Of a stretch of DNA of 64,000 nucleotides, positions 15,436 through 43,950 are shown piece by piece. Source of the stretch: Macrostomum lignano. Taxonomy: Eukaryota. The translations under genes and the position numbers were made by a program. Numbering within the stretch: position 1 is the first letter of the stretch; each line of letters begins with the position of its first letter. Where the stretch lies: positions 1-64,000 of the forward strand of contig NIVC01000294.1 of NCBI GenBank assembly GCA_002269645.1. Direction: 5' to 3'. The notes beneath the pieces were generated by a model that saw only the letters and a program-made list of their open reading frames with translations, was not told the origin of the DNA and made no database searches.

Positions 15436-15884
15436 AAGCAAACTACAATAGTGAATTGTTACGTGTAAACCACGGTATAGGAAATGTTAATTTACTCTTC
15501 CAAATTTTAGCATGTTTTCACATTGCTGTTAAGTTCATATTATTGAAATTGCACATAAACTGGTGTTATTTAACTATTTTTAGTACAGCTGTCAACAAAT
15601 ATATTACAGGAGGGCCAAATTTATAAATTTCGTAACGAGTATGCAAAGCTTCTGAGATATGCGGTAAATTATACGGCATTACACTGCACTTGTTACTGCA
15701 AGTAGGCTCTGCGTAGATACTGAATATCAATGCAAATATTGATGGGTAATAGGCATTTTTCACGGAAAAAAGAGCTGAAATTAACGAAATATAGATATTT
15801 TCCTGTTTTTGGCTGTTTAGCGCTGCTGACACCCTGTGTTTGGGACATCTGACATAATGTTGCTTTAATATATGCATCTCACAC

Positions 15885-17110: not shown

Positions 17111-17167
17111 CAAAATTCATAGATCTATTTCACTTTGCAAACAGCCTATTTAATGATAACATGAGCT

Positions 17168-19373: not shown

Positions 19374-19461
19374 ATGCGCACAGCACTGTGGCTGCCGTTG
19401 GTAGTCTGCGCCGCGTTGGCCCTGTCGGTGGAGGGCAAACCAAGCGACGCGGCCGTTTCGA
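19374..19461 (+). other. Signal-peptide exon of the giant gene (absent from the ORF track)
   Basis: gccATG, MRTALWLPLVVCAALALSVEG-KPSDAAVS: basic N-terminus, hydrophobic core, V-E-G cleavage-like site, then a phase-1 donor A|gtaagt. Confidence 0.8.
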
Positions 19462-22400
19462 GTAAGTGCTCAGCTCGATTTATCCGTAGCGGCGATTCCA
19501 GTTAGTGATGCTCTGATATTGTGTAGCTTGTGTAGAATCTACAAAATTATTCTGCATAGGGAAATTCCCTGTGGTGGGCTTATTGCTGACAGCGACTCCC
19601 TGTGGTGGGCTTATTGCTGAGAGCGAATCCCTGTGGTGTGTTTGATGTACACGTCGCTTCGCAGCGAGGCTGTTTACTAAGTGTAGAAGCTAATTTGATT
19701 TTTAGTGATTTTTCCCTGCCAGGGAAGATTATCTCGACGAATGGAGATTGATAACGATTGTTGAAATAGATAAATTTTATTTATGATTCGCAAAATTTTC
19801 GCAAATCACAAATATTGCGCCTGTCATGCAAACTTACCAGGCACCCGGAGCAAGAGCTGTCCACCAGGCAGCAAGGTGAGCTACATCTCGAAGAAGTGGT
19901 GCAAGTGCGAGCCACCTCAGCCTGAGTTCTACGGCTCCCTTATTTTTGTCATCGACATCACGGGAAGCATGCAGCCCGAGCTCAACGCCGTCAAGGAGAA
20001 CATCGAGCGCATCCTTAGAGCCAATACACGCTTCAAGGACTACGTGGTAGCTCTGTTCGGCGATCCCTACATTCGCAGGGTGCGTCGTTCTTCTAGCAAG
20101 AGCGTAATCTGGAACTTTATCCGACCGATTCGGGCTTCTTCTGGCGGCGACTGCCCCGAGTATTCGCTGTCCGGCATTGAGGACGCGCTCAAAGAGGCCC
20201 ACGGTAAATCAGTGCTGTTCCTCTTCACCGACGCCGCCGCTAAGGACCGGAAGACGAAGGAGAAAAAGGTGATCGCTATGCTGAAGAAGCGACGCGTTGA
20301 GGTGATCGTGATCGCCACTGGTCAACTGTGCCATGGCTCTTACAAAAATGAATACCATAATCTGGTAAGCGTTCGCGGCGGTCGGGTGATTCGCATGAAC
20401 AAGGAGGAAATCAGCGACGTGAGTAATTTTGATGCAAATGCGCTTTGAAGACTGCGAACTAAACTAGCGGAGGTGATCGTATTCCGCCTATTTTCCTATT
20501 TCTAGGTGATGACCTACGTTATCAAGGGTGTGAGCGGCAAGCTCAGTTTTAAGGGCTTTCCCAAAGACGCTGACAAACTCCGAGCCAGCTTGGAAGGCAG
20601 TAAGTCACTAGATGCCCGTTTAATTGGAGATAATGTGTTAATGTGTGTTATGCATTCAGCGCTATAAATGCTCAATCTGACTCAATTTAAGCCTGCTCGT
20701 GTCGCATCGCCAAGATCAAGAAGTGCATACCACTGCCAAAACCAAAGCCAAAGCCAAAACCAGGTAAGTAATTATATGACATGTACGTACGAAGTAGCCA
20801 TTTTTTCGATGTACTCCTACTCCTGATAGAATCAATAAAAGGCTAGGATTGTTGCTAAAAATCTTCCAGTTCTAACTGAGTTCATCGAGTATAAAGCTTA
20901 GAACTTTTCAAGCGTATTATTTTTAACTTAGCTCAAAAAAACTTAATTTACACTTTTTACTTCGTCAATCTCATTAAGATTGTCCGCGTGGCTTCAAGAA
21001 GCAAATAAAGAAAGAGAAGACCTGCTCTTGCAAGCCGATCCGACCAGAAAACAACTACGGCTCGCTGATCTTCGTCGTGGACATCACTAATAGCATGCAG
21101 ACTGAGATTGACATTGTCAAGGACAACATCAAGAAAATTGTGAAGGCCAATCGACGATTCAGCAATTATGTCATCGCCACTTTCGGCGATCCCTACGTTC
21201 GCCAGGTGTTGAAGTCCAACGACAAAAAAGAACTGTGGGACCGTCTTGACAGCATCTTTGCCAGAGGCGGTGGCGACTGCCCAGAATACTCACTGTCAGC
21301 CGTGGTCGATGCTGCCAAAAAAGCCGACGAGAACTCTGTGATGTTCTTGTTCACCGACGCATGCGCCAAGGACTACAAAACTAAACTGGACCAGGCGAAA
21401 AAGATCCTGGTGGAGAAACACACCCAGATTATTACAGTGGCCACTGGAGACCTGTGCAAGAAACAGCGATACCCGTATCACAACGAGTACGATATTCTTG
21501 CCAAGGCTACAGGTGGTCAGGTAGCCCACCTGAGCAAAGGACAAATGAAAAAGGTAAGAGAAAAAGATGGTAGCAGTAAAATTTTATAGATGACACGTGC
21601 TTAGTGAGGTACTCAGACCCGAATCCGAATCGAACACTTTTTCTGCAGGTGATGAAGTTCATGTTGAAGGCCGTTGCCGGCGAGGTCAGCTTCCAAGCTT
21701 TCCCATCATCAGCCTCCAAGCTGGATTCTGTTCTTAAGGGCTGTGAGTGATGAGGGAGGCTCTTAATGATCTACTAGAATAATGATTTTCTTTAAATTTC
21801 ATATTATCCAATTAATTTTTTGTCTCCAGCTTGCGAATGTCGTGAGGAGCTCCTTATCAGCTGCGTCAAGATTGGTAAGCAACACGAATCAATGGCTAGT
21901 TGTTTTCAGTTTGAATCGATTGCATATTTGAGCTCGTGAAAGAAGTACTCATATACCAGTAATAAAACAACTAAAATACCTAAATTTGCTGTAGACATCA
22001 AGTGTCCGAAGGACTACGCTAGCAAAGGTCGCTGCGTGGATGGCAAACGAACGGAAACCCGTTACACCTATCGGGTTGTCAAGGGAGTGTGCGTCAAGTC
22101 GGGTGAGAAAACGATTCGCTACAAAGGCTGCGAGCACACCAAGTGTAAGAAGTCCAAATTTGTCTGGTCGCCCTGTGTGGCGGGCTGGAAGTCTCGAACA
22201 GAGTACCTCTACACTTACAAGGAGTCAGCGCGCAAGTGCGTGCGCACCTCTCGCAAGGTGGGACGATCCAGGTGCAAGATGCCTTGCCCAGTCTACAAAC
22301 GCGTTCTGAAAAAGGGCTCCTGTTACCGCCACAAGGGCAAGTTCTACAGAAATGAAAAGTACCAAACCAACATTCGCCACAAGGTTTACCTGTGCAAGCG

Positions 22401-25400
22401 GGTTACAAAGACCCGGCGCGTTCGCTGTAACTGTGAGTATGCTCTATTTAAACTATTTCAAAATGCTCAGATCAATAGACAAGCTTGATTTTTGTTGACT
22501 TTAAAAATTTTGCACACAATTTTAGTGTCACCCTGCCCGAAATCGCGAGTTGTCCGCGGCGTGTGCAAGGCGCAAAGCACTCGCGGGCACAAGAAGGGAC
22601 GCAAATCGGTTACTTTCAGCCATTCATCTGGGCTCTATACGCACGACAAGCACATTTACTATGTGCGCAATTCCAGAGCGAAGTGCGTTCGCAAAGTCCG
22701 AGTTCAGCGACGCCTGTGCGCCACGAAGAGTGAGCAGAGTTACGGCTATTTTAACGACTTACGTGATCAGAATTTTGGTTGCATCTTATTTTGCGATAAA
22801 ATAGAAAGTCCCAGAAATAAAAGATATTTACAGGGAAACCCGGCACGAGCCCGCTACCAACGCATGGAGAAAGGCACAAAGCTTTATTTATTTAGAGACA
22901 GGGGGCTGTGTGCCACGTGGCACACTTAAGGCGACATTGTCACACAACCATTACTGCCCATTCTGCCGACTACCCTGAGCAGGCACACAAGCGCGCGGAT
23001 ACGTACGCAGTCATACGCACAGGCCTAACTTTATTTATCGTTAGGCATGTACACTTCACTGTGCCTTGGGGGTTGGCCCTCAATGGCGTTGATTGCACGA
23101 GCATTCCAATTTAGCCCCAAATTGATGTGACTGCTTTTAGAATCGAGCCTGGGCCGCTGGCACATCAAAGCGCCGTGCTAGACCACTGGGTTACGGTCCC
23201 CCTTAGATCCAAAGCTTACAGAAGTTGGTTCTTGTTATAGCTTATAAATCTCATGCCGCTTAGTAGTTGTGTCTAGAATCTAATTGCGTATCAAAATATT
23301 CAGTTTAAATAAACCTTTATTATATATAGTAGCAACAAAATAAGTTTACCATTTTCGTTGACTCACAGTGTGCCGCTGCTTTGCCATCGGCGATCCGCAC
23401 TACAAAACGTTCGATCGTCTTCGCATTGACTTCTACGGCGGCTGCAAGTACATATTGGCTGAGACCGTCAGCTCCAGCGGTGAGTGCGCATTCCGCATCT
23501 CAGGCAAGAACTGGTACCGCGGGCGCAAGCTCAAGCACCGAGTGTCTTGGACCAAGTACATCGAGCTCACAATCGGAGGCCACACGTACAAACTTGGTCA
23601 GCAGCGGCTGCTGTTTGTGGACAATCAGCCAACTCTGGTGCCGCATCGACTGCACGACGGACTTGGCTACATCTTCTACTCCGGTCGGGCCATCGAGTTC
23701 GCCTCGGAGAAGTGCGGCATTAATGTCTACTGGGACGGCAAGAGCGCCGCTGGTGTGCAGATCAACCGGGCCAAGTACGGCGGTCATGTGCGCGGTCTCT
23801 GCGGCAACTGCGACGGCGACGCTAGTAACGATCTGACGTAAGTCTTTTATTGACTAATAGCCTTGTTCGCACGGATTTTCGAGCTTGTGTATTTGTGTCC
23901 ACGACTCACACATTCTTTGTCAGCAATTTTAAACTCTCCTTTTGCTACTCGTAAGTAGGTGATTTATTACAGAGTGTTAGGCATGAAGATTTCCAGATTC
24001 TAAAACAAAATGGAAAAATGAATCATCTCTACCACGAAAGATGTTAGATTATCTTTACATTCATTAAATTAAGTGATAATAATATTCAATAATAATTGAT
24101 TACACCTGCCCCAACTGGGCCAGATGTGCAACCGACAGCTCAGCCGCAGCTATTGCGCGGCGCATCTGAAGGCTGCGTACGGCTGTTCAGTCCAAGGACT
24201 GGGGGGGGGGTCACCACACACACCCTTAATAACCCCAGCTAATGCTGGCACCCATTCTACAGCTGGGTGAAATGAAGCAATGGAGAGTTAAGTGTCTTGC
24301 TTAAGGACACAAATTGTTCCAGTGGGATCGCGAATCGAACCCCCGACCTTTCAGTAGTGACTCCGACGCTCTAACCACTAGGCACAACCCCCTTTAAGTA
24401 CTACTTTTAATAAATTTAAGTACAACTTTAAGAATTAAAAAGGCTATGGAACTAAAATTGGCCTGAATTTTCAGCGACAGAGCAGGAACAGTCTACAAGG
24501 ACCGGTCGTACGCCAACGTGCAGAAGCTCGCTCTCAGCTACCTGGTCACCGAGAAGAGCGAAGAATCTGTGGAGGAGATCGAACGCTGCAAAGACTCGGA
24601 CGGCCCGCCTGAGATCTCTAACGAAGTTGAGAAGAAGTACAGCGAGAAGGAATGGTGCGGCATCATCTCCAAGGACAGCGGACCATTCAGCAAGTGCCTG
24701 TCTTCTGGCAAGATCAGCTACGAGTTCTACTTCCGCAGCTGCGTCATCGATCTGAGCTTGCTAGAGGAGCAGCAGACCCTGCTGAAGCAGACTTACTGCG
24801 AGATCATTCAAGCCGTGAATGAGGACTGCGCCGAGGTCGGCTTTGAGGGAATCGACTGGCGAACTCACACGGACTGCAGTGAGTGTCCGCGACGATTCTG
24901 CATCACCGAATGTCATTACTTCTACCTTTTCCTAACCAAAATTGACTCAAAATTTCAGCGCCGAAGTGCCCGGCAAACTCGCACTTCACAACCAAGATGA
25001 ACCCGTGCCCAGCAACCTGCGAGTCAGCGATATTCCACACGAAACGGCAGTGCTTCAAGCTGCCAAACCGAGAGGGCTGCGAGTGCAAGAACGGCTACGT
25101 GTTGGATGGACAGCGCTGTGTCAGAATGGGAGAGTGCTCCTGCTTGTGTAAGCTCCAACTTGAAAATTACCTTTCACACCCTGTTGTTTTATCTCACCTG
25201 GCTGGCGCAAATAAAATTTTAAATCCCGCAAAATTCCAGCTTGCAATGACGCTGCACCAGCCAAGCAGTGCGCCCGCTGGAAGCGTCAGGGCCACTGCAA
25301 GAGCCTGTTTGAGACGTCCGGTATGCTGATGGCCTGCAGAAAAACCTGCGGATTCTGCCACGAGAGTAAGTGTTCATCTTAATTAAGTGCTCGCAAATAA

Positions 25401-28400
25401 ACGGTTGATGAATCAATCAAAACAATAATTTACCATTACACAGAGCCAGCCTGCGAAGATTACATCGCCAGTAGCGTCTGCGCCAAGGCCAAAGCCAGAG
25501 GTAACTGCGACAAGAGCTTCTACAAGCACTTCTGCGGTCTCACCTGCAACTGGCGCAACTGTCCCTGCCGATCGGGTAAAACCATCCGGGGCAAATGCGG
25601 GAGCGATCTCACTAGAAAGGTGACCATCTTCCGCTACAAGAGAGGCCGAGACAGAGAGTGCACCCTGGACCAAGTTGTGCGCCGCGAATCGTGCGGAAAG
25701 TGCGTTAGCAACGTAGAAAAATCCTGGGGCAAGTGCAACTACTGCACAGGCAAACGGGTCGGCAAGAAGGTTGAAACCTACAAGTTCGTTGTCACAAATA
25801 TCTAAACTTGTCGTGTACCATTTATTTATCATTTAATATGAACAGTGTACTTAAATTTTTCAAACAATACACACTTTTAGATCGGGTATCCGATGTCTGA
25901 AGCGAAGATCCGCAATCTACATGTCCTGCAGTCTCTGCAAGTTCCCCAATGGAAAGACTCGCAAAGTCATTGATAGATTCTGCAAAGGCGGCAACACCAT
26001 CATTACCAGGTACAAGGTGAAGCGACAGTCTGGCTGCTACAAGTGCAGCAGCGAGAAAACCTTTACAAGCAAGGTTATATCCTGTCGAAAGAACCCTCGC
26101 GTGTCCACAACGCCGGTTCGTGGCACCAAGACGGAGAAGCTGAAAATCTGCGTGTACCATCTGCGCAGGTGTCGCTGCTTGGAGTCTTGCAAAACCATCG
26201 TCCAGCCCACCGAGTGCAAGCCGAGAAGCCTCATTAAGAAACGGTGCGTTATTCGCAACCGAGCGCCCGTGTGGAAGTCGTTCTGGCAGTATGAGCGTCT
26301 TGTGCGCAAAAAGCTAAAGACAAGGTGCGAGAGGTACAGGAGAACGCACATTGGCCGAGTTGGTAAGTAAAATTACATAGAGGCAGTTTTTGCTTATTAA
26401 AATCAGTTCAAGTGCAGCAAATGGTTGAATTTTCGCTATTTCAGTTTGCCCCAAGCGACTGAAATCAATCACGATTCGCGGCAAAAACTGCAAGTTGTCG
26501 GCAAGAATAACTTTTTACCACGTCAGCTCCAAGTGCGCCTGTACCAAGGTGGTCAAGTATCGATCCAAGGGATTCTACTGCTGCCCGAAGCCCAAGACCA
26601 AGAAAGGACCCTGCAGCATTAAGCGCGGAGTCAACGTGATGCGCACGGTTCGCACAACATTCTACAAGCTGGTGAAAGGAAGTTGCATCAGGCAGACGAG
26701 CGGCAAGCGACACCAGGTGTGCAACTGTCGTCCAAATCGCTTCAAGCGTGATTGCCAGTTTGGCAAGCTCAGCCAAAGAGTGATGAAGTGCCGACTCACT
26801 CGAGGATCGCGAGGCAACTACTGCAAGTGCTGGCAGGAGAAGATAGACATTCCAGTGACCTGCCGCGCCACCTCGACCAGGAAGCTCACCGGATGTACCA
26901 TTAGAAAAGGCCTCAACAGATTCATGAAAGTTCGCTACTTCTATTCTGCTAAGGAGCGCTGCAAGTGCGTCAAAAGGCATCGCGATCGCCTGGTGTGGTG
27001 TGGTAAGTTTTAAAAGCTGCATCAACGCTTCTTTCTGTTTGTAAAAATATACCATTTAATCAATTTTGTTCATATTTTCGATCAAAACAATTTTTTAGGC
27101 TGTCATAGCAAGCCGATGTACGAGGTGAAGCCATGTCCGAAAAAGTGCAAAGACCCCAAGCGATGCAGTAACAGGTGCGTCAAACAGCACATCCGTTACG
27201 TTGGCATGATGAAAGTGCGCAACAAGCGCAAGGTTTGCGTCAGAAAGATTGTAAGCCTAAAGAAAGAGCGTTGCTGCTGCTCACCTGTTGTCTTGGACCT
27301 GAAGCCGCGCAAAAAGTGCGTGTCTGGCAGTCTGCTTATAAAGTACACCTACTCGAAGAAGCTCTGTCATGGAAAACGTTCCAAGCTTGCCCAGTGCTGC
27401 GTTGTTCGGCGTTCTAGGAGCAGGCGAGTCGCTTGCAAGCAGGGAGTGATCAAAACGGAAGCCTCTAGATGCGGCAGAAATGGATATTTCACCATCACCA
27501 AAACCATCGCTAAGCTCAAAAAATGCAAATGCACCAGGAAAGTTCGGCGCTCCACGTGCCGCTGCAAATGTCCAAAGAAAAAGAAGCGCGTTGCGTGCGA
27601 TGCTGGGAAACGAATCTGGCGAGAGACTATTGTGTCATACAAAATCGTCAATTGTAAGTGTAAAAGACGCGTTGTCGCTCGCGAGTTCCCATTGAATCCG
27701 TGCAAAAGGATGCCGAAGTCGCCATCTAAGGTCGGCAAGTGCAACAAGAAGGGCATCAAGAAGCTGTACTACTTCTATTCTGTTAGATCCGGATGCAAGT
27801 GCAAGAAGAGGACTAAAGTTCGAACCTGCCGCTGTCGTAAGCTGATGCTCTTAAATTGAAACTTTTTTCGAACGTATTGTATTTTAAGCAGAAGCATACA
27901 AGCTACATTTTTATCCTACACACTCAGGCTGCTCTAGCAGAGTCTCGTACACCAAATGGAAATGCAACGCCAAGTCGGGACTGCGCACGCGAGTTAAGAC
28001 CTACGTGGTCAGGCGCGGATGCCACTGCGTGGCAAAGAGAAAGGTTGAAAAAAGGCAGACACGTAAGAACACGGCGTAGATGTCTAAATATCTTTTTTAA
28101 TTAAGTTGTTTTGTATCGAGAAAAGTACATTTTAGTTTCGCTCTTTTACAGGTTGCCATCGCAGACGGAAGGTTGAGAAGATTTGCCGGCGCGGGGTCCT
28201 GGCTTTCTTCCTAAGGGAGTACCGACGACGTGGCTGCAAGTGCAGCTGGAAAGTCACCAACGTAGTCAGAAGACGTTGCGATCCTCCTCAGCCGCCCAAG
28301 GAGATTGTAAAGAAGAAGTGCATCAGTGGCAACGTGCGTGTCCTCATCCGCACAAAAATTAGATGGGTAAAGAAAACTATTAGGCTGTTCGATAAGTACT

Positions 28401-34400: not shown

Positions 34401-37400
34401 ATGCATAGGTCCCTGATATTTCCTGACACTAATACTCGCACGAATACGACCTATGCTCTCTCTCTCTCTGTTATTACCTTAGTAACTATACTCTATTTGC
34501 AGGATGCGCCCACAAAAACAAGATCGTGAACAAACGCTGCATCAGAGGCCACATAATCACTTACACGGCTGTGAACTTCGTCAAGAAAGGCTGCAAGTGC
34601 CTCAAGACAACACGAGGAAGGAGGAAGTTTGTTACTTGCAAGCACAAGCGGGAAGACCAGCCCGACAGGATCGTTATTGGCCAGTGCCAGAGAAAGGGAC
34701 CGAATAGAAATGCCGGTTACGTGAGGGTCGTCTACGAGAAGGAATATCCTAGACGATGTAAGTGCAAGACAGATCGTCGAAAGCGTTGGGAGCCGTGCGA
34801 CTGTTCTTTGATTCCACAGTATAAGTCAAGAAGCAGACTGATTTGCCACAAGTCTGGTGCCTATTTCAACCGAGTGACAACCTACTATGTTGTGCAGCTG
34901 TCAAGCGAAGGCGGTTCATTCTGTGAGAAGCGTCGCAGATCCGTGATTGTTCGCATTAACAAGTGTTTCGACAGACGCGGACGCCCGCTCAGGCGAAAGG
35001 TGACCTCCGGTTTCGACAAGTGTAGCCGAAGGCGCACAAGATGTAACTATAAAAAGCTCATTCAACAATCGATCGTTAGGAAATGCGCTTGCAAATGGAA
35101 AACGATTGAGGTTATCGGTAAAAAATGCTGTTGTGACAAGCCAACTGTGCGGCGGTCGTGTCTGCGAAATGACACCAAGGTGAAGATCACAAAGTACTAC
35201 ATTCTTGATGGCTCCGGTAACTGCGTTAAGAAAACTAAGAAGCAGAAGTACAAGCTCACAAAAAAGAAGTCTTGCAAGTATTCTAGCGGTTACGTTGTTC
35301 GTTGCACAGGTCGAAGAAAGCAGGCTGTTTACAGAAAATACTACCAGCAAAGTTCCACTTCTCAAACTGTAAGTGCATCCCGTACTACAAAGACTTCCGC
35401 GTTCCTTGTCGATGCATCCCTAAGAGAATCGTTAAGAAGGTCCGCTGCGATGCTGAACGCAACAGGTGGGTTCATGAAGTGGTGGTGCGAACTCTTCGGG
35501 GCAGAAATGAAAGAAAGCGATGCGTGTCAAAGTCTCGATTTAGGTACACCAAAACATGTGTTAGAAAGCCACCACGAACTACGATGGGACGGTGCAATAA
35601 AGCCAAGGTTAGACTAAGAACTACACACTATGAAATCAAAAAGAAATGTCGCTGCGTGCGGAAGAAACGACTGGAAACAATTTCCTGTACATGTCAAAAG
35701 AAAACATGGTGGGTTTCGCTGCAGTCTCAGTGCAAGCGTCACAAGAACGGCTACAGTTATTACCCAAGAATTCTCAAGGGCTACAGGTACGTTGAGAAAA
35801 CGAATCGCTGTGTAACGACCACTCTAAAAACAGCGCACGTAATTTGCGGATGTCCAAAGCCGACTAAGCGGAAGCGATGCGTGAGAAATGCGTGGAAAAT
35901 TACTGAGATCAAGTACATAGTCGACAGGGCGGAAAATACTTGCAAAAAAGTTGTTCGTCACAAGAGAAAGCCGATGAAAGAGTGCAGCACTAAAAAGGTG
36001 CGAACGGAAGAGTCATCGTTTGTGGATGCAAAGACGGGCTACAAAACAATTGTTTACAATGTTGTCGTGAACCGAAGATGCAAATGCGTCAGGTATAAGG
36101 AAACTGAAAAAATCGAATGGCTGTGCGAAGTAATTATGAAATCCAAAATAGTCGAAAGTCAAAGGTGCTTCAAAGGTGTGATTCTGCAAAAGCAAGCCGG
36201 CGAGCCCTACTTCAACCAGGAGAATACTTGCACTGTCGACTACTCAATTATTAAAATCGACATTACAGGTTATTGTCCGAAGGCTGGCAAGGTGCGCCGA
36301 AAGGTGATTGGAGACTGTAGCTCTAAGACTGGTCGACAGAAGGTGCAGTATACTTCGTGGAAGCCAAATTTGAAGAAGTGCACCTGCGAAAGGACCGTTA
36401 AGATTGAACACGAAATTTGTGACTGCGAGCCAATCCATAACCGATACCAGAAGCGTGGCTGCCGCAATCATAACACCAAGTATGTCGATACATTCTTCTG
36501 GACCCTTGTCAACGGCGTTTGCGTGAAAGGACGACAGAGACAGGAGAAGGAGGTCTCATGCAAGGTTGGCCGCTTCAAAAAAGAGTCTCAATGCGATCCT
36601 CTGACCAGAAAGAAGCAGATTACTATAATCCAGCGCAAGCTCCGACACTGCTCCTGCAAGGAGAGAATCAAGAAGTACAAATGCATGTGCAAGTGCAAGA
36701 AAGGTGTACTATCGAAAACTTGCGATTCAAAGACAGGCTACACAATCGTTACAAAGATCCGATACGAGTTGAAGCAGTGCGCCTGCAAGAAGAGAACTAC
36801 CAGGCTCAGGCTGAAGCCTCCCCCGCCATGCGGCAAGAAGTCGATCAAAAAAGGCAACTGTCGCAGAAGCCGCTCAAGTGGCAGTGCCATCGCTGGCTAC
36901 CAGAAAATCACCGTTTGCAAAGCAAAGCGGCGAGGCTGCAGATGCCGGCTCTTGTGCCGCAGCAGAAAGCGCCTGTGCTGTGAGTTAAATATAGAATATC
37001 TACATATTACAGAAATTACTCCATAGTTTTTCTAATGTAAATTAATATCCACTTAAAAAATATATAAATTTTCAGATTGCTCGCCCGATGTTCGGGTGAA
37101 GAAAGTCTGCCTTGGACACACCAAAGTCCGCGTCAGCACGTTAAAGTATTCGAAAAACGCACGCCGAAACCGCTGCGAATGGAAGGAGGTGTCGAAGGTT
37201 ACCATCGACAAGGACTGCTACGGCATGGTTGACATTCCGGACACAAAGCAGTGCAACAAAAAGAACGGCGTTCTGATTATTAAGCACTGGCGCTACCAGC
37301 CCATCAACTGCAAGTGCAGGAAGAGAGTCTACAAAGTCACTAAGGGCAGATGCAGTAAGTACTTTTAATTTATTAATATTTCACTGCTTGATTCGAATTT

Positions 37401-40400
37401 TGATAGTAACTTTCAAATCGTATTCTCTTCTAACAGAGTGCAAAAATGTATGGCGCAAGGTGTCTGAGGGTCAGTGTGACACGACGGACTCTTGCACCAA
37501 GCCGGTGATTTACGAACGTGAAGTTCTGAACGGAATTCGCTGCCTCAAGAAGAGGAAGACAGAGTACGTTACATGCTCGTGCGAGTGCAAGGCGAGCATC
37601 GCAGCTACAAGAAAGTGCGAACGCTCTAGCGGAACCTGGGTAACATCGCAGGTGACATGGAAGCTGCGCTGCAGCCGATCGACCAACTCCTGCAAGTGCG
37701 AGCGGCACATATCAAAGAAGCGACAGAAGCCGAAATGCAACGCAAAGCAGCAGCTGCCGTACTGCAACAAGCGCACCAGACGAGTTGAAGTTCAATACCG
37801 CGAGGAACGCCTTAGCAGGTCAAAATGTAGGTGCTACTGGACCACTGTGAGGACCAAGCATGGTTTCTGCCACTGCCGAAAACCAGAAGTCAAGAGAAGA
37901 TGCGAGGCGGACAAGTACCGCATCAAGCTGACAACAATCACGGAGAGTCTGGACGAGAAACACTGGAGGTGCATCAGAAGTCGCAAATCTACTCACGTGC
38001 CTGTTGAACCGTCCTGCAAGCCGAGAAAATCAGTCAGAAACATTGCCTGCAATGCTCTGAAGGACAAGAAGGAGTGGAAGGTTGTGACAATTCGCAGGTT
38101 GCATCCAAATCTTGCAAGTGCATCCGCATCGTGCACAGGTTCCCCCAGGTTTGCATCTGCGACGAACTGCCGGAGAGGCAGCGCTACTCTGTAAAATGTC
38201 AGCGCAAGACTGGCAAAATTATCAAAATCCGTCGCAGTCGCGTGCTTCGTAAAAGCAAGAACGGCAAGAAGTCGTGCAACATCGTCATCAAGACCACTGT
38301 GAAGCCAGTCAGCTGTGGCGACGGTACCTGGCGCTACGTTGGCAGCCCTGCGTGCCAAATGCTTGCCAAGAAGGGATGCAACAGCTACAGAAAGTACAAG
38401 AGGATCGTGCGGAAGGGCTGTACCTGCAAAGCCGAGTTCAAGCGCAAGCCGTGCAAGTGCTGTAAGTGCTGAGTACTGCATTCTAAATTTCACATTCTTA
38501 CAGGATAAGTTAAAAAACAAACGCCAACGAGTTGAGTATGCTGAACTAAATGTTTTACATAATTTTAGGCTGCCCAAAGCCGAAAAAGACGCGCATCTGC
38601 AGTGCCGATGGTCGGCGATTCCTGTTCACCAAATACATATACGAGAGGCGTAGCTGCAAGTGCGTCAGAAGCACAAGACGCTGGTCTGTGCCAGTTGGTA
38701 TGTCTAGTTCCAGAACTACGCTCATACTATTAAAATACTCGTTGAACTTTGAGGCTCTAAAGGTCAAACAAAAAACACCTATTCACGCACGATTTGAATC
38801 CCTCAGAGTGCAGTCAATCTGTTCGAAGGCGGAAGAAATGCCTCAAGGATGGTAGAGAGAAGATTGTGAAAACTGTTTTCCGTCCAGTCAACTGCGCTTG
38901 CAAGAAGTTTAACAGAACCTCTTGGTGCCGCTGCAGTAAGTCTAACGGCTCGATTGATTAGTAAATATAGATTCTAAAAAATATATTAAAATACATTGAG
39001 TTTAAACTTGTTCGAAAATTATCCGTCTGAACTCGACAGGATGTCCAAAGCCAGTTAGAGAAAGCCGATGCGACTCAGAGAAGCGACAGAAGGTTATGAC
39101 TTTGGTGCAATTCCGGCTTAAGGGATGCAAGTGCCAGTTCAGACAAGACGTCACGCGACATACAATCCGTGAGTTTGCATGGTAGACTAAAGTTAAAGTA
39201 TTGCTATACTACTAGTAGTAGAAAATGATGAACAAATGTAGTGAATACAAACTCTATGATTTCGCTATACAAATTATCCAGGCTGCAAAAAGGGAGGCCG
39301 CAAGAAGTACCGCAAGGTTGGAAAATGCAACATGACTACCAGGATGCAGCTGTACGAGTACTATCAGTCCGAATTCGACGAGGTGAACTGCGTGTGCAAG
39401 AAGAAAAAGATGAGAATCTACAAGCCATGCAGTAAGATTTTTTGAAGCCCCCCCCCTCAATGAATGAAATTTTGTAGACTATTATGCTTGCACTATTCAA
39501 TATTTATTATTTCAGAATGCAAAGGAAGCTCTCGCAAGGTTATTCAACCATGCAACAAGGCCTGCCGAAAGATGGTCCAAGTTACACGGTACCGAATATC
39601 CAAGACGACGTGTCAGCGCAGATCGTACAAGTTCCAGCAGGTCTGCTGCTGCCTCGGCAAGCGGTACAGCATCAAGAGGTGCGATCCAAAGAAGGCAATG
39701 CAAATCACCATTAATAGGTGGGAGAAGATGGAGCAAGACGAGAACTTTGAGTCCGTGTGCAATTGGAAGGAGAAGGAACGACGAACACCAATAACCGGCT
39801 GCAACACCCGCAAGGTCACTTTCAAGGACACAAATGTGTTAAAAGCAAGTACACCCGATCATACTTCAAATATGTGATCCAAGGCAGAAAGAGCAAGAGG
39901 GGAACAGTTTGCAAGTGCGTGAAAACCAGAGTGCGTCAGGAAACCCGATACTGCAAGTGTCCCCGCAGCCGCATCAGCAAAAAGAAGTGCAGGAATAACA
40001 ACGTTCTTGTGTCTACAAAGACTATGTATATTTTGGAGGATGGTCAATGCCGCAGCTACACCAGCCATTCCGAGAAGGTTCTCAGATGTGCTAAATCCAT
40101 TAAGAGAAAGTTTAAATGGAGCAAGTGTGACAAACGTACATGCAAGCAGAAGAAGTATGGAACCCTGTGCTCGTTCAGAAATTGCAAGATTGACATTCGC
40201 GTCGACTATCGCAACCCCAAGGTGTACGATTGCTGCTGCCCGAGCTCGAAGGTCCAGATCAAGTTCCTGGAGTGTCAGGATAAGCAGAAACGCCGTGTCT
40301 ACAGAAAGTTCTGGCAGATTTTCTACCCCAAGAGAATGGTATGTAAGAACTTCGCGAAGAACATTTACAAGCCAGTTCGCTGCGGTGGCTGGAAGGCACG

Positions 40401-43400
40401 AAAAGTGTTCCCCGGAGCTTGCCGAATCCGACGCGCCGATAAGCACTATTATCAGAGACTACGCATTCAATACAATGAATACGAGGAGGGCTGCGCGTGC
40501 CGAGCTAAGACACTTAAACCCCTTCGACTGTGCAAGTGTCGTGGCAACCACAAAGTGAAGGTGCAGACGTGACGGCGTACTACAGCACAGGACCATGAGC
40601 TACCGGTTGGTCAAGACCAAGGGCAAGCGTCGCTGCAAAGCATTCATTGCTAAGCACTGGGATTACAAGCCTCCGTGTGTACCAGCAAGCAAGGCCAAGT
40701 GGAACAAGCGAGTGAGCAAGTGCAATGACGGTATCAAAGTTATCACTGACTATCGCAGAGTGCGGGTCGGATGCAAGTGCAAGAAGCAGGAAAAGGTTAC
40801 GACCGTCATCTGCGGCTGCTCCAAGACAGTCACGGAGAGAAAGCGCTGCAGGCGCGGTCGCTGGGAGATCACCAGGTATGGCAAGAAGCTGTCCTGCCGT
40901 AGCGAGCGCTTCTGCTCATGCGTACCGTACAAGTACACGTTGCGGAAGCTTCCTAACTGCCCGAAGGGCTCCGTCAAAAAGAGTCCTTGCGTACGAGGCT
41001 TCCAAAAAGTGGAAGCTCGCCTTTACGCCATCAAGAAATGCCAGTGCACGATGCGGGAGTTCAGCAGGCACAGGCGTTGCCCAGACAAATGCCCGGATCT
41101 TATTTCCACACGAACATGCGTTAAGCTGATGAAGGAGGGTCTTTGCGAGCATCCGCAGCGAAAGGGCACCGTTGGTCAAATCTGTGCTCGAACGTGCGGA
41201 AAGTGCTTTAAGTGCGAGTCACCCAACACCATCAAATATCGCATGTTTGTTGGATTCAGCCTGAAATCTAACGCTCTCTACTCGAAGCGCTTTTACATCA
41301 AGACGATCCGAAAAACGAAGGTCTCTCACTGCATGATGGCTTGCAAGAAGGATGAAGGTTGCAACTCGTTCGACTTCAACAGCCGTACTAAGACATGTGT
41401 GCTCAACTCCGTCTCAAAATTCACTTTCCGGTATAGAATTAGCACCTTCAAGGAGTCTGATCATAAGGTTAATGTCAACATCGTTCATTTCGTCAAGTAC
41501 TGCAAGCACAGTAAGTTTAAGTTTGTTTAAGCTTTAGTGTATAATTACTATCTGATATTTTTTAAATGTATTACGTAGAATGAATTGCACCGTATAATCA
41601 TTGACTTCAGAGTGCCGCTGTGGAGCCTTCACACCTGTGGGCAAATGCATTTGCGAGGGTAAAGGTGTTCTGAGACGCTGCTACAAGCAGTTTACTCTCC
41701 GTGAGTTCTACAACAAGCCTGATGGTCGCTGCGCCCAGCGAGCCAAGAGTCTTCGACTGAAGGCTGACTGCGGTAAGGATACAAGTTCTATTGCTTCAAT
41801 ATTGGAGCTAAAATAGTAATAAAAAGCATTTGTTTTTAAGCCTTTAAAATTTTGGAACTGAAATTCCAGAAAACCCGTGCGTCGACCAAATTGAGGCCAA
41901 TGTCTGCAGAAAAGAGAAACAAGCCGGCAAGTGCCTGAAGGATCGAGAGACTCGAATCCTCTGCAACAAGACTTGCTCGAGATGCGCGTGCAACAAGCAG
42001 TACACCGTGAAGGTTCCTTGCAAACGAGTCAAGGGAGCGAACAGGCGCAACTTCGAGCGAAAGTTCATGCAGGTCAGATACAAGAGGGCCAAGTGCGGCA
42101 TCTGCACCACTAGCTACAAAATCCGCCGCGAAAAATGCAAGCCGCCGGCCTGCTTCGAGCAGACTATCAAGGTGATTGGCGACTGCATCGGAGGCGAGAG
42201 ACTGGTCATTACCTACGCAATTGAGCTCACCGATATGGCTCAGTGCAAGCGAAAGAAAATCGATGAAGTGAAGTACGGCTGCAAGGGAGTGTGCAGCACC
42301 GTTTCTAAGCAGGTATCAAAGTGCCGCTATCACAAGAAGGATAAGAAATACTACAGAAATGTTATGTCCAGCTTCTGGGTGTCCAGCGGCACCAAGCCGA
42401 AAGAGCTGGCATTCACCAGAAAGTACCTGTGCGATCCCAGCGTGTGCCCCAAGGAGATGTCATTCAAGGGCCCGTGCCTGCTGGGCCACAGGTTCCGCTA
42501 CCGCGTCTACTACGTGTTGGACTACAGGGAGAGATGCACAAAATTTGTGAATGCTCATGGCGAAGAGTGCTCCAGAAAGAAGTCCAAGCGCTGCTTCAAC
42601 ATTCTGCCACGCAAGAAATGCGCCGAAGTTAAGAAGAAGGGCTACTGTTTGCGACATAATGGACCGTCTAGACTCTGCATGAAGACGTGCGGTCTGTGCA
42701 AGCCACACCAAGTTCGCGTTGGCAAGAATAAGAAGACGGTTTCAAAGAAGTCTAAACTTGATAAGAAAAAGCTGAAAGAAGCCTACGACATTATCAACGG
42801 AATATCATCTCGATACGGTGGCAGATACCTCCAGAAGGTAACCTGGGCCACGATCGCTCTCTCTGAGAGTGAAGAAGGCAAAGCTTACATCGAGAGGAGC
42901 TTCAAGATTAATAAGAACAAAATCAACCCACCAAACAAGTCAACATCACTGGAGGGGAAGATCCAGACCGCAGTGCATGAAATTGAAGAAAAGAGCGGTA
43001 AAGACGGCATCCAGAAAATTAAGAAGACAAAAACGACAAAAACAAAGAAGCACGAGAAAACTACCACCGACAAGAACAAAAAGGTGAAGAAGAGCAAAAA
43101 CAGTTCAAGCAGTGGCGGCTCCGAGGAGACAACAACAAAAACTATGACAACAAGGGGTAAAGGCGGATCTGGAAGCCAAACAGTTGTCGTTAATAAAGGT
43201 GGCGAAGAATCTGGCGGAGGTTCAGATTTAGAGGAACATATCATCACCACCACACATGAGGATGATGGTAGCGGCAAAGTCAAAGTGACGCGACACGTAA
43301 CCGTAACTAGGAATGGCAAGAAAACTTCGAGCACGTCAAGCAAAGTAATTAGTTCTAAAGATGCCCGATTAGCTTCTAAGGGCGGCAGCAGTAGCAGCTT

Positions 43401-43515
43401 CAGCAGCAGCGGCAGCAGCAGCAAAGAAAGCAGCAGCAGCAGCGGCAGCAGCAGCGAAGAAAGCAGCAGCAGCAGCGGCAGCAGCAGCAGCAGCGAAGAA
43501 AACAGCAGCAGCAGC

Positions 43516-43553
<38 letters not shown>

Positions 43554-43950
43554 AAAAAGCAGCGGCAGCAGCAGCAGCGGTAGCAGCAGCGAAGAAAGCA
43601 GCGGCAGCAGCAGCGAAGAAAGCAGCGGCAGCAGCAGCCAAGAAAGCAGCAGCAGCAGCGGCAGCAGCAGCAGCAGCGAAGAAAGTAGCTTCGGTAGCGG
43701 CTTCGGCAGCATCAAGTTCAGCAGCGGTGGCAGCAGCAGCGCCAAAGTGACTTCATCTGGCCCTGAAGAGTCGGTTACAACCAGCACAATCGAGGACGAC
43801 GGCAGCGGCAAGATGAAGGTGACTCGAAACGTTTCGACCAGCAAGGGCGGAAAGACTCACAAGAGTTCGTCAACCAAATACATCAAGAGCAGCGACAGTG
43901 CGTTCTCGTCAGAGGACAGCGACGCCCTTGGAATGTCCGGCTTCATGTGA
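19374..43950 (+). CDS. Giant secreted mosaic protein, about 6,593 aa, 36 exons: SP-VWA-VWA-(K/R/C repeats)-VWD-C8-TIL-ShK x2-(~5,000 aa K/R/C repeats with ShK x3 and PAN/apple)-Ser/Gly/Glu tail
   Basis: Manually spliced GT-AG exons with consistent phases: 19374-19461, 19841-20418, 20506-20599, 20692-20763, 20979-21553, 21649-21742, 21830-21874, 21995-22432, 22526-22729, 23369-23837, 24475-24878, 24959-25147, 25240-25365, 25444-25783, 25881-26362, 26445-27002, 27099-27836, 27928-28062, 28152-30131, 30221-30484, 30571-30705, 30799-31500, 31582-32425, 32509-33133, 33226-33808, 33907-34368, 34503-36979, 37076-37354, 37437-38461, 38569-38697, 38807-38935, 39040-39168, 39282-39431, 39516-41510, 41611-41772, 41870-43950. 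Four single-base corrections are needed (~35350, ~38108, ~39826, ~40560). The corrected total of 19,782 nt is a multiple of 3. Confidence 0.85.
19930..20599 (+). other. VWA domain 1 (hemicentin/VWA7 type)
   Basis: SLIFVIDITGSM (MIDAS-like DxTxS), FGDP, GGDCPEYSLSGI, VLFLFTDA. Confidence 0.85.
21058..21742 (+). other. VWA domain 2 (hemicentin/VWA7 type)
   Basis: SLIFVVDITNSM, FGDP, GGGDCPEYSLSAV, VMFLFTDA. Same exon layout as VWA1: large exon plus 94-nt exon. Confidence 0.85.
22885..23203 (-). mobile_element. tRNA-derived SINE, family B, in intron 9 of the giant gene
   Basis: Minus strand ggggaccgtaacccagtggtctagc ...ggctcgattc; (TAAA)n tail; homologous to 10475-10816. Confidence 0.82.
23369..25147 (+). 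other. VWD-C8-TIL module (mucin / vWF / IgGFc-binding protein type)
   Basis: VWD: CFAIGDPHYKTFD...GCKYILAE...VRGLCGNCDGDASNDL. C8: WCGII...GPFSKC...YFRSCVIDL...CEIIQAVNEDC...WRTHTDC. TIL: CPANSHF...PCPATC...EGCECKNGYVLDGQRCVRMGECSC. Confidence 0.9.
24085..24394 (-). mobile_element. tRNA-derived SINE, family A (full length), in intron 10 of the giant gene
   Basis: Minus strand gggggttgtgcctagtggttagagc ...ggttcgattc; conserved body; (ATT)n-like tail. Confidence 0.88.
25240..25560 (+). other. Two ShK (ShKT)-like domains
   Basis: CNDAAPAKQCARWKRQGHCKSLFETSGMLMACRKTCGFC and CEDYIASSVCAKAKARGNCDKSFYKHFCGLTCNWRNC show the C-D..C....G.C.....C..TC..C pattern. Confidence 0.75.
41089..41510 (+). other. 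ShK-like domain followed by a PAN/apple domain
   Basis: CPDLISTRTCVKLMKEGLCEHPQRKGTVGQICARTCGKC, then KTIRKTKVSHCMMACKKDEGCNSFDFNSRTKTCVLNS (PAN C-xxx-C...C-x-S-F-x-F...C-x-L-x-S). Confidence 0.78.
41878..42702 (+). other. Two further ShK-like domains separated by K/R/C repeats
   Basis: CVDQIEANVCRKEKQAGKCLKDRETRILCNKTCSRC and CFNILPRKKCAEVKKKGYCLRHNGPSRLCMKTCGLC. Confidence 0.72.

What the first reader, a model, noticed from the sequence alone, without database searches (positions are those of the whole stretch)
19374..43950. Giant (~6,600 aa) polycationic, Cys-rich secreted mosaic protein: candidate undescribed bioadhesive/mucus/cement component
Seen: signal peptide, 2x VWA, VWD-C8-TIL, 5 ShK-like domains, PAN/apple, about 5,000 aa dominated by Lys, Arg and Cys, and a Ser/Glu tail, all in one phase-consistent 36-exon model. 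Established: VWD-C8-TIL drives multimerisation of mucins and vWF and is used in flatworm and sea-star adhesive proteins; Macrostomum Mlig-ap1 is a large Lys/Arg-rich VWD-containing glue protein. Inference: this architecture (hemicentin-type VWAs, ShK, PAN, disulfide-rich non-GRK repeats) differs from ap1/ap2 as I know them and may be a separate gland secretion system, such as mucus/rhabdite, egg cement or seminal plug.
Basis: partly seen in the sequence, partly recalled or inferred. Interest (0 to 1): 0.9.

Follow-up and report, generated by a model that had tools for sequence, protein, structure and literature searches.

The report
Giant cationic cysteine-rich secreted flatworm protein
This is a real, expressed but uncharacterised gene of the flatworm Macrostomum lignano that encodes a ~6,550-residue secreted protein made mostly of about 100 copies of a previously undescribed, positively charged, disulfide-stapled beta-hairpin module; it looks like a glue, mucus or matrix polymer, but no data yet say where or for what it is used.

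Summary
On the + strand, 19374-43950, I reconstruct one gene of 35 exons and 6,550 aa (761 kDa, pI 10.2, net charge about +1270, 543 Cys). The window is M. lignano contig NIVC01000294.1. The first 27 exons match the RNA-seq-guided annotation BOX15_Mlig022224g1 (PAA86075.1, "hypothetical protein"), which stops at 4,112 aa because of a frameshift. The remaining ~2,500 codons are unannotated and need four single-base corrections, probably assembly errors.

Domains found: signal peptide, 2x VWA_4, a full VWD-C8-TIL assembly, PAN, five ShK-pattern domains (the first pair passes Pfam's cut-off as one two-stretch hit) and a Ser-rich tail.

New here:
- The Lys/Arg/Cys region is an array of ~100-110 diverged ~47-aa modules, alternating in two types to give a ~94-aa, 8-Cys unit.
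- Phase-1 introns sit at a fixed point in the module.
- AlphaFold predicts a beta-hairpin fold. There is no Pfam or PDB match, and only two credible relatives among 1.84 billion proteins.
- The VWD starts with a GDPH self-cleavage motif.

It is not Mlig-ap1 or Mlig-ap2. A secreted structural or adhesive role is inferred from anatomy only; tissue and function are unknown.

The parts
19374..43950 (+). Whole gene: 35 exons, 6,550 codons plus stop. Equals BOX15_Mlig022224g1 (PAA86075.1) extended by ~2,500 unannotated codons.
   Evidence: Identity to P0006 and its accession. Contig coordinates equal window coordinates.
19374..19436 (+). Signal peptide MRTALWLPLVVCAALALSVEG
   Evidence: Only hydrophobic stretch in the protein. 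Exon 1 is 19374-19461 in the annotation.
19936..20403 (+). VWA_4 domain 1 (hemicentin-type VWA; metal-site variant D-I-T-G-S)
   Evidence: Pfam PF25106, E 9e-37.
21062..21538 (+). VWA_4 domain 2 (D-I-T-N-S)
   Evidence: Pfam PF25106, E 2e-39. M. lignano paralogues at 37-49% identity.
21997..22729 (+). First block of four Lys/Arg/Cys hairpin modules, upstream of the VWD
   Evidence: Module segmentation.
23377..23838 (+). VWD domain
   Evidence: Pfam PF00094, E 5e-23. Aligns end to end with FCGBP, VWF and MUC2/5 D assemblies.
23389..23400 (+). GDPH motif (residues 737-740): predicted autocatalytic Asp-Pro cleavage site
   Evidence: Aligned column for column with GDPHY of several FCGBP D assemblies. 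Requirement for D and H is from PMC10880436; cleavage with disulfide retention is from PMC8267560.
24653..24878 (+). C8 domain
   Evidence: Pfam PF08742, E 2e-11. Exon end at 24878 from the annotation.
24967..25137 (+). TIL domain
   Evidence: Pfam PF01826, E 3e-8.
25147..25562 (+). ShK-like domains 1 and 2 (25147-25358 and 25449-25562, an intron between them)
   Evidence: Pfam PF01549, E 4e-9, two stretches, above the cut-off. Coordinates.
25563..41077 (+). Main array of ~100 Lys/Arg/Cys beta-hairpin modules (~47 aa each; ~94-aa A/B double module with 8 Cys)
   Evidence: Cys autocorrelation peaks at 45-47 and 93-96. Alignments A1 and A3. A/B alternation, Fisher p 3e-5 to 9e-5. Introns at a fixed module position. 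AlphaFold pLDDT 80-92 for two of three modules. No Pfam hit.
35287..35350 (+). Frameshift 1 (one base missing from the assembly); it ends the annotated ORF prematurely at 35614
   Evidence: Frames 2 and 1 overlap here; the module pattern continues only in frame 1.
38085..38105 (+). Frameshift 2 (one base missing)
   Evidence: Correcting it restores a canonical module, C-x22-CKC-x10-CIC.
39800..39835 (+). Frameshift 3 (one base missing)
40555..40566 (+). Frameshift 4 (one extra base)
   Evidence: Correcting it restores CKC-x10-C-x21-C.
41087..41206 (+). ShK-like domain 3
   Evidence: Six-Cys pattern; Pfam ShK E 0.07, below the cut-off.
41213..41503 (+). PAN/apple domain
   Evidence: Pfam PF00024, E 2e-9, above the cut-off.
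41875..41985 (+). ShK-like domain 4
   Evidence: Six-Cys pattern only; no Pfam hit.
41986..42588 (+). Further Cys-rich basic region with degenerate modules
42589..42699 (+). ShK-like domain 5
   Evidence: Pfam ShK E 0.13, below the cut-off; six-Cys pattern.
43099..43947 (+). Ser-rich C-terminal tail (41% Ser). A 110-aa core is 69% Ser with SSSEE motifs. It is flanked by two copies of a ~36-aa motif, EDDGSGK(V/M)KVTR...
   Evidence: This is the only DNA-level tandem repeat in the gene (43385-43677).

Best explanation
The locus is a single, transcribed M. lignano gene for a ~760-kDa secreted, strongly polycationic, disulfide-rich protein. I read it as a structural, polymer-forming component of an extracellular secretion such as a glue, cohesive matrix or mucus-type material.

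Shown by sequence and tools:
- An N-terminal signal peptide and no membrane anchor.
- Two hemicentin-type VWA domains whose metal-site residues (D-x-T-x-S) are kept.
- One complete VWD-C8-TIL assembly of the mucin/VWF/FCGBP type, starting with a GDPH motif.
- About 100-110 copies of a ~47-aa basic module. AlphaFold models it as a short strand plus a long amphipathic beta-hairpin closed by cysteines.
- The modules alternate between a 5-Cys and a 3-Cys form, which gives an 8-Cys unit of ~94 aa.
- ShK-like and PAN modules near the C-terminus.
- A tail that is 41% serine.

Inferred mechanism:
1. The D assembly drives disulfide-linked oligomerisation, as it does in mucins and VWF.
2. The Asp-Pro bond in GDPH cleaves itself in the secretory pathway. 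That would leave a ~740-aa VWA fragment and a ~5,800-aa fragment held together by a disulfide, as in FCGBP.
3. The long chain of stiff cationic hairpins (about +1,270 net charge, 8% aromatic residues) binds polyanions such as glycocalyx, sulfated glycans, conditioned surfaces or a partner secretion. It coheres through electrostatic and cation-pi contacts.
4. The VWA, PAN and ShK modules dock it to other matrix or cell-surface components.
5. The serine tail, if phosphorylated or O-glycosylated, supplies an anionic or hydrated counter-segment.

Which gland or tissue makes the protein is not known.

The four frameshifts are most likely assembly errors, so the true product is the full-length protein.
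For: Gene reality and expression:
- 27 exons are identical to the RNA-seq-guided annotation. The annotation method is described in PMC5730564.
- There are 34 GT-AG introns, nearly all in phase 1.

Secretion: a signal peptide and no other hydrophobic segment.

Domains.

GDPH aligned with the FCGBP cleavage sites: PMC8267560, PMC10880436.

Module array:
- Periodicity.
- Invariant Cys columns.
- Introns inside the second C|x|C of the module in about 20 junctions.
- A/B alternation.
- AlphaFold pLDDT 70 for a single module, and 80-92 for two of the three modules in the triple model.
- No DNA-level tandem repeat, so the array is old and diverged rather than an assembly artefact.

Charge and composition.

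Precedent in the same animal: Mlig-ap1 is a Lys/Arg-rich cohesive protein with VWD-C8-TIL, and its function is blocked by heparin (PMC6410801).

Assembly-error reading of the frameshifts:
- The module pattern, PAN and ShK domains stay intact for 2,500 codons after the first shift.
- There is no in-frame stop, although 5.6% of possible substitutions there would create one.
- A conserved prenyltransferase gene in the same window also needs a one-base insertion.
- The assembly is PacBio/Canu polished with Pilon.
Against: - There is no expression pattern, proteomic detection or phenotype for this gene. The ID is absent from every supplement I could search, including the Wunderer 2019 SI files held as text.
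- The protein has only one D assembly and no C-terminal cystine-knot hit, so the mucin/VWF head-to-head plus tail-to-tail polymerisation scheme cannot simply be assumed.
- The VWD has RGLCGNC rather than the CGLC motif of the VWF propeptide.
- The disulfide map of the module is not established. I had no access to model coordinates, and the Cys count per single module is odd.
- The tail is nearly neutral unless it is modified.
- The frameshifts could be real, in which case the product is the annotated 4,112-aa protein.
Confidence: 0.5

Rival explanations
1. It is a tissue extracellular-matrix protein rather than a gland secretion. In this reading it acts like hemicentin: a fibre or track-forming component deposited at basement membranes or cell junctions, with the cationic modules binding heparan-sulfate-type glycans.
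For: The N-terminal VWA domains are of the hemicentin type (PF25106). The protein is very large and modular with phase-1 exons. PAN and VWA are common matrix-docking modules.
Against: None of the other hemicentin parts (Ig array, G2F, EGF, fibulin-type end) was detected. A pI above 10 with 26% Lys+Arg and a mucin-type D assembly with GDPH fit secreted gels and glues better than basement-membrane proteins. M. lignano has a family of small secreted basic 2xVWA_4 proteins, which looks more like a secretory toolkit.
Confidence: 0.15
2. It is a host-defence product. In this reading the ~100 cationic, amphipathic, disulfide-stapled beta-hairpins act as antimicrobial units. They could work either within the intact polymer in surface mucus, or after cleavage at the many dibasic sites.
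For: The predicted module is a basic amphipathic hairpin closed by cysteines, which from my own knowledge is the design of tachyplesin- or protegrin-type peptides. Dibasic pairs are very frequent (sequence). ShK domains occur in defence and toxin contexts.
Against: There are no regular processing spacers or conserved cleavage sites between modules. The modules are highly diverged rather than being copies of one optimised peptide (mean column identity 20-23%). The VWA, VWD and PAN architecture points to assembly and anchoring.
Confidence: 0.1
3. The frameshifts are real. Then the locus encodes the annotated 4,112-aa protein (or is a decaying copy in this neopolyploid genome), and the 3' 8 kb with PAN, ShK and the Ser tail is no longer translated.
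For: All four frameshifts lie in the last third of the gene. None of them sits in a long homopolymer. The GenBank annotation ends at 35614. With four indels under neutral decay, the chance of seeing no stop codon is still roughly 0.1-0.2 by my estimate.
Against: After each shift the module pattern, invariant cysteines, phase-1 intron positions and Pfam-significant PAN are fully preserved. There are no nonsense codons in 2,500 codons. A housekeeping gene in the same window shows the same kind of single-base defect. Indels are the typical error of long-read assemblies.
Confidence: 0.12

Closest known systems
Mlig-ap1, the cohesive adhesion protein of the same species (GenBank MH586844; PMC6410801)
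   Same: Both are giant secreted proteins (5,407 against ~6,550 aa) and extremely basic through Lys and Arg. Both contain one VWD-C8-TIL assembly and are cysteine-rich in the structured part. Both are M. lignano genes.
   Different: The basic regions of ap1 are low-complexity repeats (for example SRKPRRKNRKSRKP 56 times), and none of these occurs here. ap1 has a C-type lectin and 17 EGF modules, which were not detected here. This protein instead has 2x VWA_4, five ShK-like domains, PAN, a Ser-rich tail and ~100 folded Cys-stapled modules. ap1 is reported on scaf1170 of Mlig_3_7, whereas this gene is on contig NIVC01000294.1 (I did not map contig to scaffold). It is not an ap1 orthologue or close paralogue.
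FCGBP, gel-forming mucins (MUC2, MUC5AC/B) and von Willebrand factor
   Same: The VWD-C8-TIL assembly aligns over its full length (E 4e-25 for a single FCGBP assembly, about 1e-22 for VWF). The GDPH motif sits in the same column as the self-cleaving sites of FCGBP.
   Different: There is only one D assembly, against 13 in FCGBP and 3-4 in mucins and VWF. No cystine-knot or VWC hit was found. There is no long central Pro/Thr/Ser mucin domain; the bulk is a cationic Cys-rich array.
Hemicentin (for the N-terminal VWA type)
   Same: VWA domains matching Pfam VWA_4 (PF25106) at the N-terminus of a giant modular extracellular protein.
   Different: Here there are two VWA domains. No Ig, G2F, EGF or fibulin modules were detected.
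Sea-star footprint protein Sfp1 and other marine cohesive proteins (as described in PMC6410801 and from my own knowledge)
   Same: Large multi-domain secreted cohesive proteins with VWD/C8 and high Cys content. From my own knowledge, Sfp1 is also cut into disulfide-linked subunits.
   Different: Sfp1 has galactose-binding lectin, discoidin and EGF modules and is not polycationic. There is no sequence relation outside the VWD.
Fibronectin type I / 'finger' modules (a resemblance only, from memory)
   Same: Similar size (~45 aa), an all-beta small disulfide module, and comparable spacing C-x17-23-C-x-C-x8-10-C.
   Different: No Pfam fn1 hit even at E up to 5. Foldseek found no PDB match for the models. 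The typical Tyr/Trp core positions are not conserved. This resemblance is untested as homology.

Membership tests
VWD-C8-TIL 'D assembly' proteins (mucin / VWF / FCGBP type) | VWD domain followed by C8 and TIL, in that order | tested here: met
   Pfam VWD 5e-23, C8 2e-11, TIL 3e-8. Residues 3-353 of the query align to whole D assemblies of FCGBP, VWF, MUC2 and MUC5.
VWD-C8-TIL 'D assembly' proteins (mucin / VWF / FCGBP type) | GDPH Asp-Pro autocleavage motif at the start of the VWD (a subset of the family) | tested here: met
   The motif is present at residues 737-740 and aligns with FCGBP GDPHY. Actual cleavage cannot be tested with these tools.
VWD-C8-TIL 'D assembly' proteins (mucin / VWF / FCGBP type) | C-terminal cystine-knot dimerisation domain and multiple D assemblies (gel-forming mucins and VWF proper) | tested here: not met
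   No Cys_knot or VWC hit in the C-terminal 927 aa or in P0006 at E up to 0.1, and only one VWD. It is therefore not a gel-forming mucin or VWF orthologue.
Mlig-ap1 / flatworm ap1 family | Low-complexity Lys/Arg (GRK) repeats with the published peptides | tested here: not met
   No occurrence of SRKPRRK, KNNKRRV or KSRKVN in any of the six frames of the window.
Mlig-ap1 / flatworm ap1 family | C-type lectin domain plus an array of Ca-binding EGF modules around the VWD-C8-TIL | tested here: not met
   There are no Lectin_C hits. The only EGF-type hits are sub-threshold (E 0.002) and overlap the TIL.
Mlig-ap1 / flatworm ap1 family | Expression in adhesive gland cells and presence in footprints | not testable with these tools
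   No expression data are available here. The ID is absent from the supplements searched.
Hemicentin | N-terminal VWA_4 followed by a long Ig array, G2F, EGF and a fibulin-type C-terminus | tested here: not met
   VWA_4 is present twice. None of the other modules was detected.
ShK (ShKT) domain | Six-cysteine pattern and a Pfam PF01549 score above the cut-off | tested here: inconclusive
   All five show the Cys pattern. The first pair passes as one two-stretch hit (37.2 bits against 20.9). The third and fifth score 14.2 and 13.2 bits, and the fourth gets no hit.
PAN/apple domain | Pfam PAN_1 above the gathering score | tested here: met
   34.9-37.4 bits against a cut-off of 21.4.
Lys/Arg/Cys hairpin module (provisional new family) | A ~47-aa unit: CxC, 8-10 residues, C, an ~18-residue hairpin, CxC, 9-11 residues, CxC. 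Three invariant Cys, tandem arrays, phase-1 intron in the second CxC. | tested here: met
   Alignments A1 and A3 and intron positions. In a profile search of 1.84 billion representatives, the only hits were this protein, one M. lignano paralogue (A0A1I8HCF7, 26-31% identity), one 281-aa protein of unknown origin (UPI000608D073), and one weak, probably spurious metagenome hit at E 5e-4.

The most novel reading that the evidence does not exclude
The Lys/Arg/Cys double module is a new extracellular domain family that builds a semi-rigid polycationic rod. The protein would then be the main structural component of a flatworm secretion whose molecules are still unknown, for example rhabdite or epidermal mucus, egg-cementing glands or another gland type. 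It would work as a single-chain self-coacervating glue: about 100 cationic hairpins, plus a phosphorylatable or glycosylated poly-Ser counter-segment, plus a self-cleaving, disulfide-multimerising VWD head.
Probability: 0.2. Interest if true: 0.8.

Novelty: new variant of a known kind. Interest (0 to 1): 0.6.

Why it matters
M. lignano is the best-developed model for reversible underwater adhesion, and so far only two of its secreted structural proteins have been characterised. This gene would add a third giant polycationic secreted protein. Its charge is carried by a folded, disulfide-stapled repeat instead of low-complexity sequence, which is a different design principle for cohesion or polyanion binding and could be copied in biomimetic materials.

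The module has no Pfam or structural match and almost no relatives in public protein space, so it is a candidate new domain family.

On the practical side, the GenBank entry is truncated by 37%. About 2,500 codons, including PAN, three ShK-like domains and the Ser-rich tail, are missing. Any proteomic or RNAi work that uses the current annotation would miss them.

Tried and rejected
1. Word-indexed homology searches with two module-array exons (659 and 526 aa) found nothing. That tool apparently does not return the window's own protein, so the blanks are weaker than they look. The exhaustive profile search is the informative one.

2. My first splice model used four 'introns' of 31-47 nt to keep the frame. 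I rejected them because the annotated introns are all at least 78 nt and because frameshift correction restores canonical modules. The C8-to-TIL junction is an 80-nt intron in the annotation.

3. An iterative HMM started from one module found only ~35 copies, because the modules are so diverged. Segmentation by cysteine spacing worked better.

4. The alignment of overlapping two-module windows (A2) came out staggered, so I did not use it.

5. Foldseek against the PDB gave only generic hairpin or immunoglobulin noise for both the single-module and the three-module models (E above 0.5, TM below 0.3 for the triple model). I propose no fold assignment.

6. I considered an Fn1 ('finger') relationship from the Cys spacing. 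It has no support from Pfam or Foldseek and remains a lead only.

7. I looked for tissue information by searching 'Mlig022224' in full texts and in the held supplements of seven M. lignano papers. There were no hits. Some of those files were cut when stored, so absence is weak evidence.

8. Contig look-ups for the paralogue P0008 and the foreign relative P0007 returned nothing, so the source organism of P0007 stays unknown.

Full report
WHAT IS THERE

The window is the first 64 kb of Macrostomum lignano contig NIVC01000294.1 (assembly Mlig_3_7, GCA_002269645.1), and window coordinates equal contig coordinates. On the + strand an ATG at 19374 opens a reading frame that runs, through GT-AG introns, to a TGA at 43948-43950.

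A splice-aware dynamic-programming parse trained on the locus's own codon usage gave 37 exons and 6,440 aa with no internal stop. A version that also allows frameshifts gave 6,577 aa.

An exhaustive profile search later returned the locus's own GenBank product: PAA86075.1 / A0A267GJ37, 'hypothetical protein BOX15_Mlig022224g1', 4,112 aa. Mapping that protein back to the DNA gives 27 exons, 19374-35614, with introns of 78-639 nt. Of these, 24 are identical to my ab initio exons. The three differences are the exon-1 donor, an extra 45-nt exon at 21830-21874, and two alternative splice sites.

That annotation comes from a genome-guided RNA-seq transcriptome plus TransDecoder (PMC5730564). The gene is therefore transcribed and its 5' two-thirds are independently supported.

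THE 3' THIRD AND THE FRAMESHIFTS

The GenBank ORF ends at 35614 after ~90 residues that have lost all resemblance to the preceding sequence. In frame 1 the same DNA continues the repeat pattern. No gene is annotated in the next 10 kb.

Annotated introns are all at least 78 nt. Holding to that, the downstream part is best read as exons:
- 34503-36979
- 37076-37354
- 37437-38461
- 38569-38697
- 38807-38935
- 39282-39431
- 39516-41510
- 41611-41772
- 41870-43950

This reading needs four single-base corrections: one base missing near 35347, 38098 and 39829, and one extra base near 40561. At 38098 and 40561 the correction recreates a textbook module, whereas the alternative 31-38-nt pseudo-introns delete its cysteines.

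The final model has 35 exons and 6,550 aa. It weighs 761 kDa, has pI 10.2, 1,000 Lys, 712 Arg, 441 Asp+Glu and 543 Cys.

I think the shifts are assembly errors, for four reasons:
- After each shift the module pattern, the phase-1 intron positions and a Pfam-significant PAN domain are intact.
- There is no in-frame stop in 2,520 codons, although 5.6% of all possible substitutions there would make one.
- A conserved prenyltransferase beta-subunit gene in the same window also needs a one-base insertion (GAGGCACC should read GAG GGC ACC).
- The assembly is PacBio/Canu polished with Pilon.

This is not proof. I give a real truncation or a decaying copy about 0.12.

KNOWN DOMAINS

The N-terminus MRTALWLPLVVCAALALSVEG is the only hydrophobic segment.

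Two VWA_4 domains follow (E 9e-37 and 2e-39). Their D-I-T-G/N-S motifs match the metal-site position. Their nearest relatives are other M. lignano proteins at 37-49% identity, including a complete 512-aa secreted protein made of just two such domains.

After four basic Cys modules comes a full VWD-C8-TIL assembly. It aligns end to end with the D assemblies of FCGBP, VWF, MUC2 and MUC5AC/B.

Its first strand reads CFAIGDPHYKTFD, and the GDPH aligns with the GDPHY of several FCGBP assemblies. In FCGBP every such site is cleaved between Asp and Pro before secretion, and the fragments stay linked by a disulfide (PMC8267560). Asp and His are both required, and cleavage stabilises the domain (PMC10880436). 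Cleavage at Asp738-Pro739 is therefore predicted here, not shown.

Two ShK-like domains follow; as a pair they pass Pfam's cut-off.

Near the C-terminus lie:
- a third ShK-like domain;
- a PAN/apple domain (above cut-off);
- a small Cys-rich exon;
- a fourth ShK-like domain;
- ~200 aa of degenerate basic Cys-rich sequence;
- a fifth ShK-like domain;
- a Lys-rich linker;
- a 282-aa tail.

The tail is 41% Ser. Its 110-aa core is 69% Ser with SSSEE motifs and is bracketed by two copies of an EDDGSGK(V/M)KVTR... motif.

THE LYS/ARG/CYS REGION IS AN ORDERED ARRAY OF A NEW MODULE

Cysteine positions autocorrelate at 45-47 and 93-96 residues. Cutting the sequence at each long Cys-free loop yields about 110 units whose modal length is 47-49 aa.

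The aligned units share the pattern CxC, [P/K] plus 8-10 residues, C, 3-5 residues, about 18 residues of alternating hydrophobic and basic positions, CxC, 9-11 residues, CxC. Three cysteines are invariant or nearly so, and two are facultative.

The facultative cysteines are not random. A unit that has the first CxC tends to have the second (odds ratio 12.5, p 9e-5). Consecutive units alternate between having and lacking them (odds ratios 0.05-0.08, p 3-5e-5). The real repeat is therefore a double module of ~94 aa with 5 + 3 = 8 cysteines, enough for four disulfides.

In about 20 junctions the intron splits the codon between the two cysteines of the second CxC, always in phase 1. Four exons (129-150 nt) hold exactly one module each. 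This is the signature of an array built by exon duplication.

At the DNA level nothing in the array registers as a tandem repeat, and mean column identity is only 20-23%. The array is therefore old, and it is neither a recent expansion nor an assembly artefact.

AlphaFold2 was run with the modules as their own alignment. For one module it gives a short strand plus a 12-residue-per-arm beta-hairpin at pLDDT 70. In a three-module construct two of the three modules reach pLDDT 80-92.

Pfam finds nothing in the array even at E up to 5. Foldseek finds no PDB relative.

A profile of the module was searched against 1.84 billion representative proteins. The only hits were this protein, one M. lignano paralogue fragment (A0A1I8HCF7, 26-31% identity), one 281-aa protein of unknown origin with clearly the same module but less basic (UPI000608D073), and one probably spurious metagenome hit.

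HOW IT PROBABLY WORKS

Shown: the protein is secreted, has no membrane anchor, is enormous and polycationic, is rich in structural disulfides, and carries recognised assembly and docking modules.

Inferred:
- The D assembly oligomerises the protein through disulfides and self-cleaves at GDPH.
- The chain of cationic amphipathic hairpins (26% Lys+Arg, 8% aromatic) binds polyanionic partners and coheres by charge and cation-pi contacts.
- VWA (metal-dependent), PAN and ShK modules anchor it to other components.
- The Ser tail, if phosphorylated or O-glycosylated, gives an anionic or hydrated counterpart.

The closest functional precedent is Mlig-ap1, the Lys/Arg-rich cohesive protein of the same worm, whose action is abolished by heparin (PMC6410801). 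I put 0.5 on 'structural component of an extracellular secretion'. Rivals are:
- a hemicentin-like tissue-matrix protein (0.15);
- a defence polymer or polyprotein of cationic hairpins (0.10);
- a truly truncated or decaying gene (0.12).

I cannot say which gland makes it.

COMPARISON WITH KNOWN PROTEINS

It is not Mlig-ap1 or Mlig-ap2. Their epitope repeats are absent from all six frames. Ten probe primers quoted from the SI table, which for the identifiable ones belong to ap2 transcripts, do not map. ap1 and ap2 are reported on scaf1170 and scaf3366, and the domain sets differ.

It shares the D assembly with mucins, VWF and FCGBP but lacks their multiple D assemblies, cystine knot and mucin domain. 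It shares the VWA type with hemicentin but nothing else.

The module's Cys spacing recalls fibronectin type I fingers. That is memory, and no test run here supports it.

NOVELTY AND SCORE

The gene exists in GenBank as a truncated hypothetical protein. I found no publication, in situ record or supplement entry for it.

The overall kind, a giant VWD-bearing secreted structural protein of a marine invertebrate, is known. The module array and the architecture are new, so I rate it 'new variant of a known kind'.

Interest is 0.6. It is a well-defined, testable candidate in a model system for bioadhesion and a likely new domain family, but it has no functional evidence yet.

Noticed in passing
window 56412-57793 (- strand), shift near 57080: The prenyltransferase beta-subunit gene is split into two overlapping ORFs (Pfam PF00432 positions 1-145 and 150-304). 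The conserved sequence ...SLFEGTAEWVGRCQTYEGGF... is restored by adding one G (GAGGCACC should read GAG GGC ACC). This is either a single-base assembly error or a pseudogenised copy.
   Followed up: partly
window 2540-17640 and 47786-62864: The gene is flanked by at least 20 separate short-period satellite arrays (units of 4, 12 and 18-52 bp, 15-190 copies each). One 28-bp unit occurs at 2540-3405 and, inverted, at 55727-56012. There is also a 2.3-kb array of a 48/431-bp unit at 60525-62864.
   Followed up: no
window 10878-13085 (+ strand): Exons of an MFS_2-type transporter gene (Pfam E 2e-9). An (AGAC)n microsatellite of ~750 bp (11294-12042) lies between its ORF segments, so that region would translate as endless TDRQ or CLSV repeats.
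   Followed up: no
window 253-1092 (+ strand) and 50162-50737 (- strand): A RabGAP-TBC domain exon lies at the very start of the contig (E 1e-14), and there is a U-box/RING-type E3 ligase exon (E 4e-7). Both are ordinary neighbouring genes.
   Followed up: no
L001 (NIVC01000032.1) 10001-13333; proteins P0001-P0005: M. lignano has a family of small secreted, Arg/Lys-rich proteins built only of two or three VWA_4 domains joined by CxC-containing linkers, and two of them also carry an LCCL domain. At 37-49% identity they are the closest relatives of this gene's N-terminus and are themselves uncharacterised.
   Followed up: partly
window 20692-20763 and 21830-21874: After each VWA domain there is the same pair of small exons: a linker of type VMxxxxKxVxGxxSFxxFP, then a short CxC-containing exon. 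The N-terminal VWA unit was therefore duplicated as a three-exon cassette. The 45-nt exon 21830-21874 was missed by my ab initio parse and is known only from the annotation.
   Followed up: partly
protein P0007 (UPI000608D073): A 281-aa protein of unknown organism carries 4-6 copies of the same CxC-hairpin module with far fewer Lys and Arg. This suggests the fold came before the extreme charge. Its source could not be traced with the tools left.
   Followed up: partly
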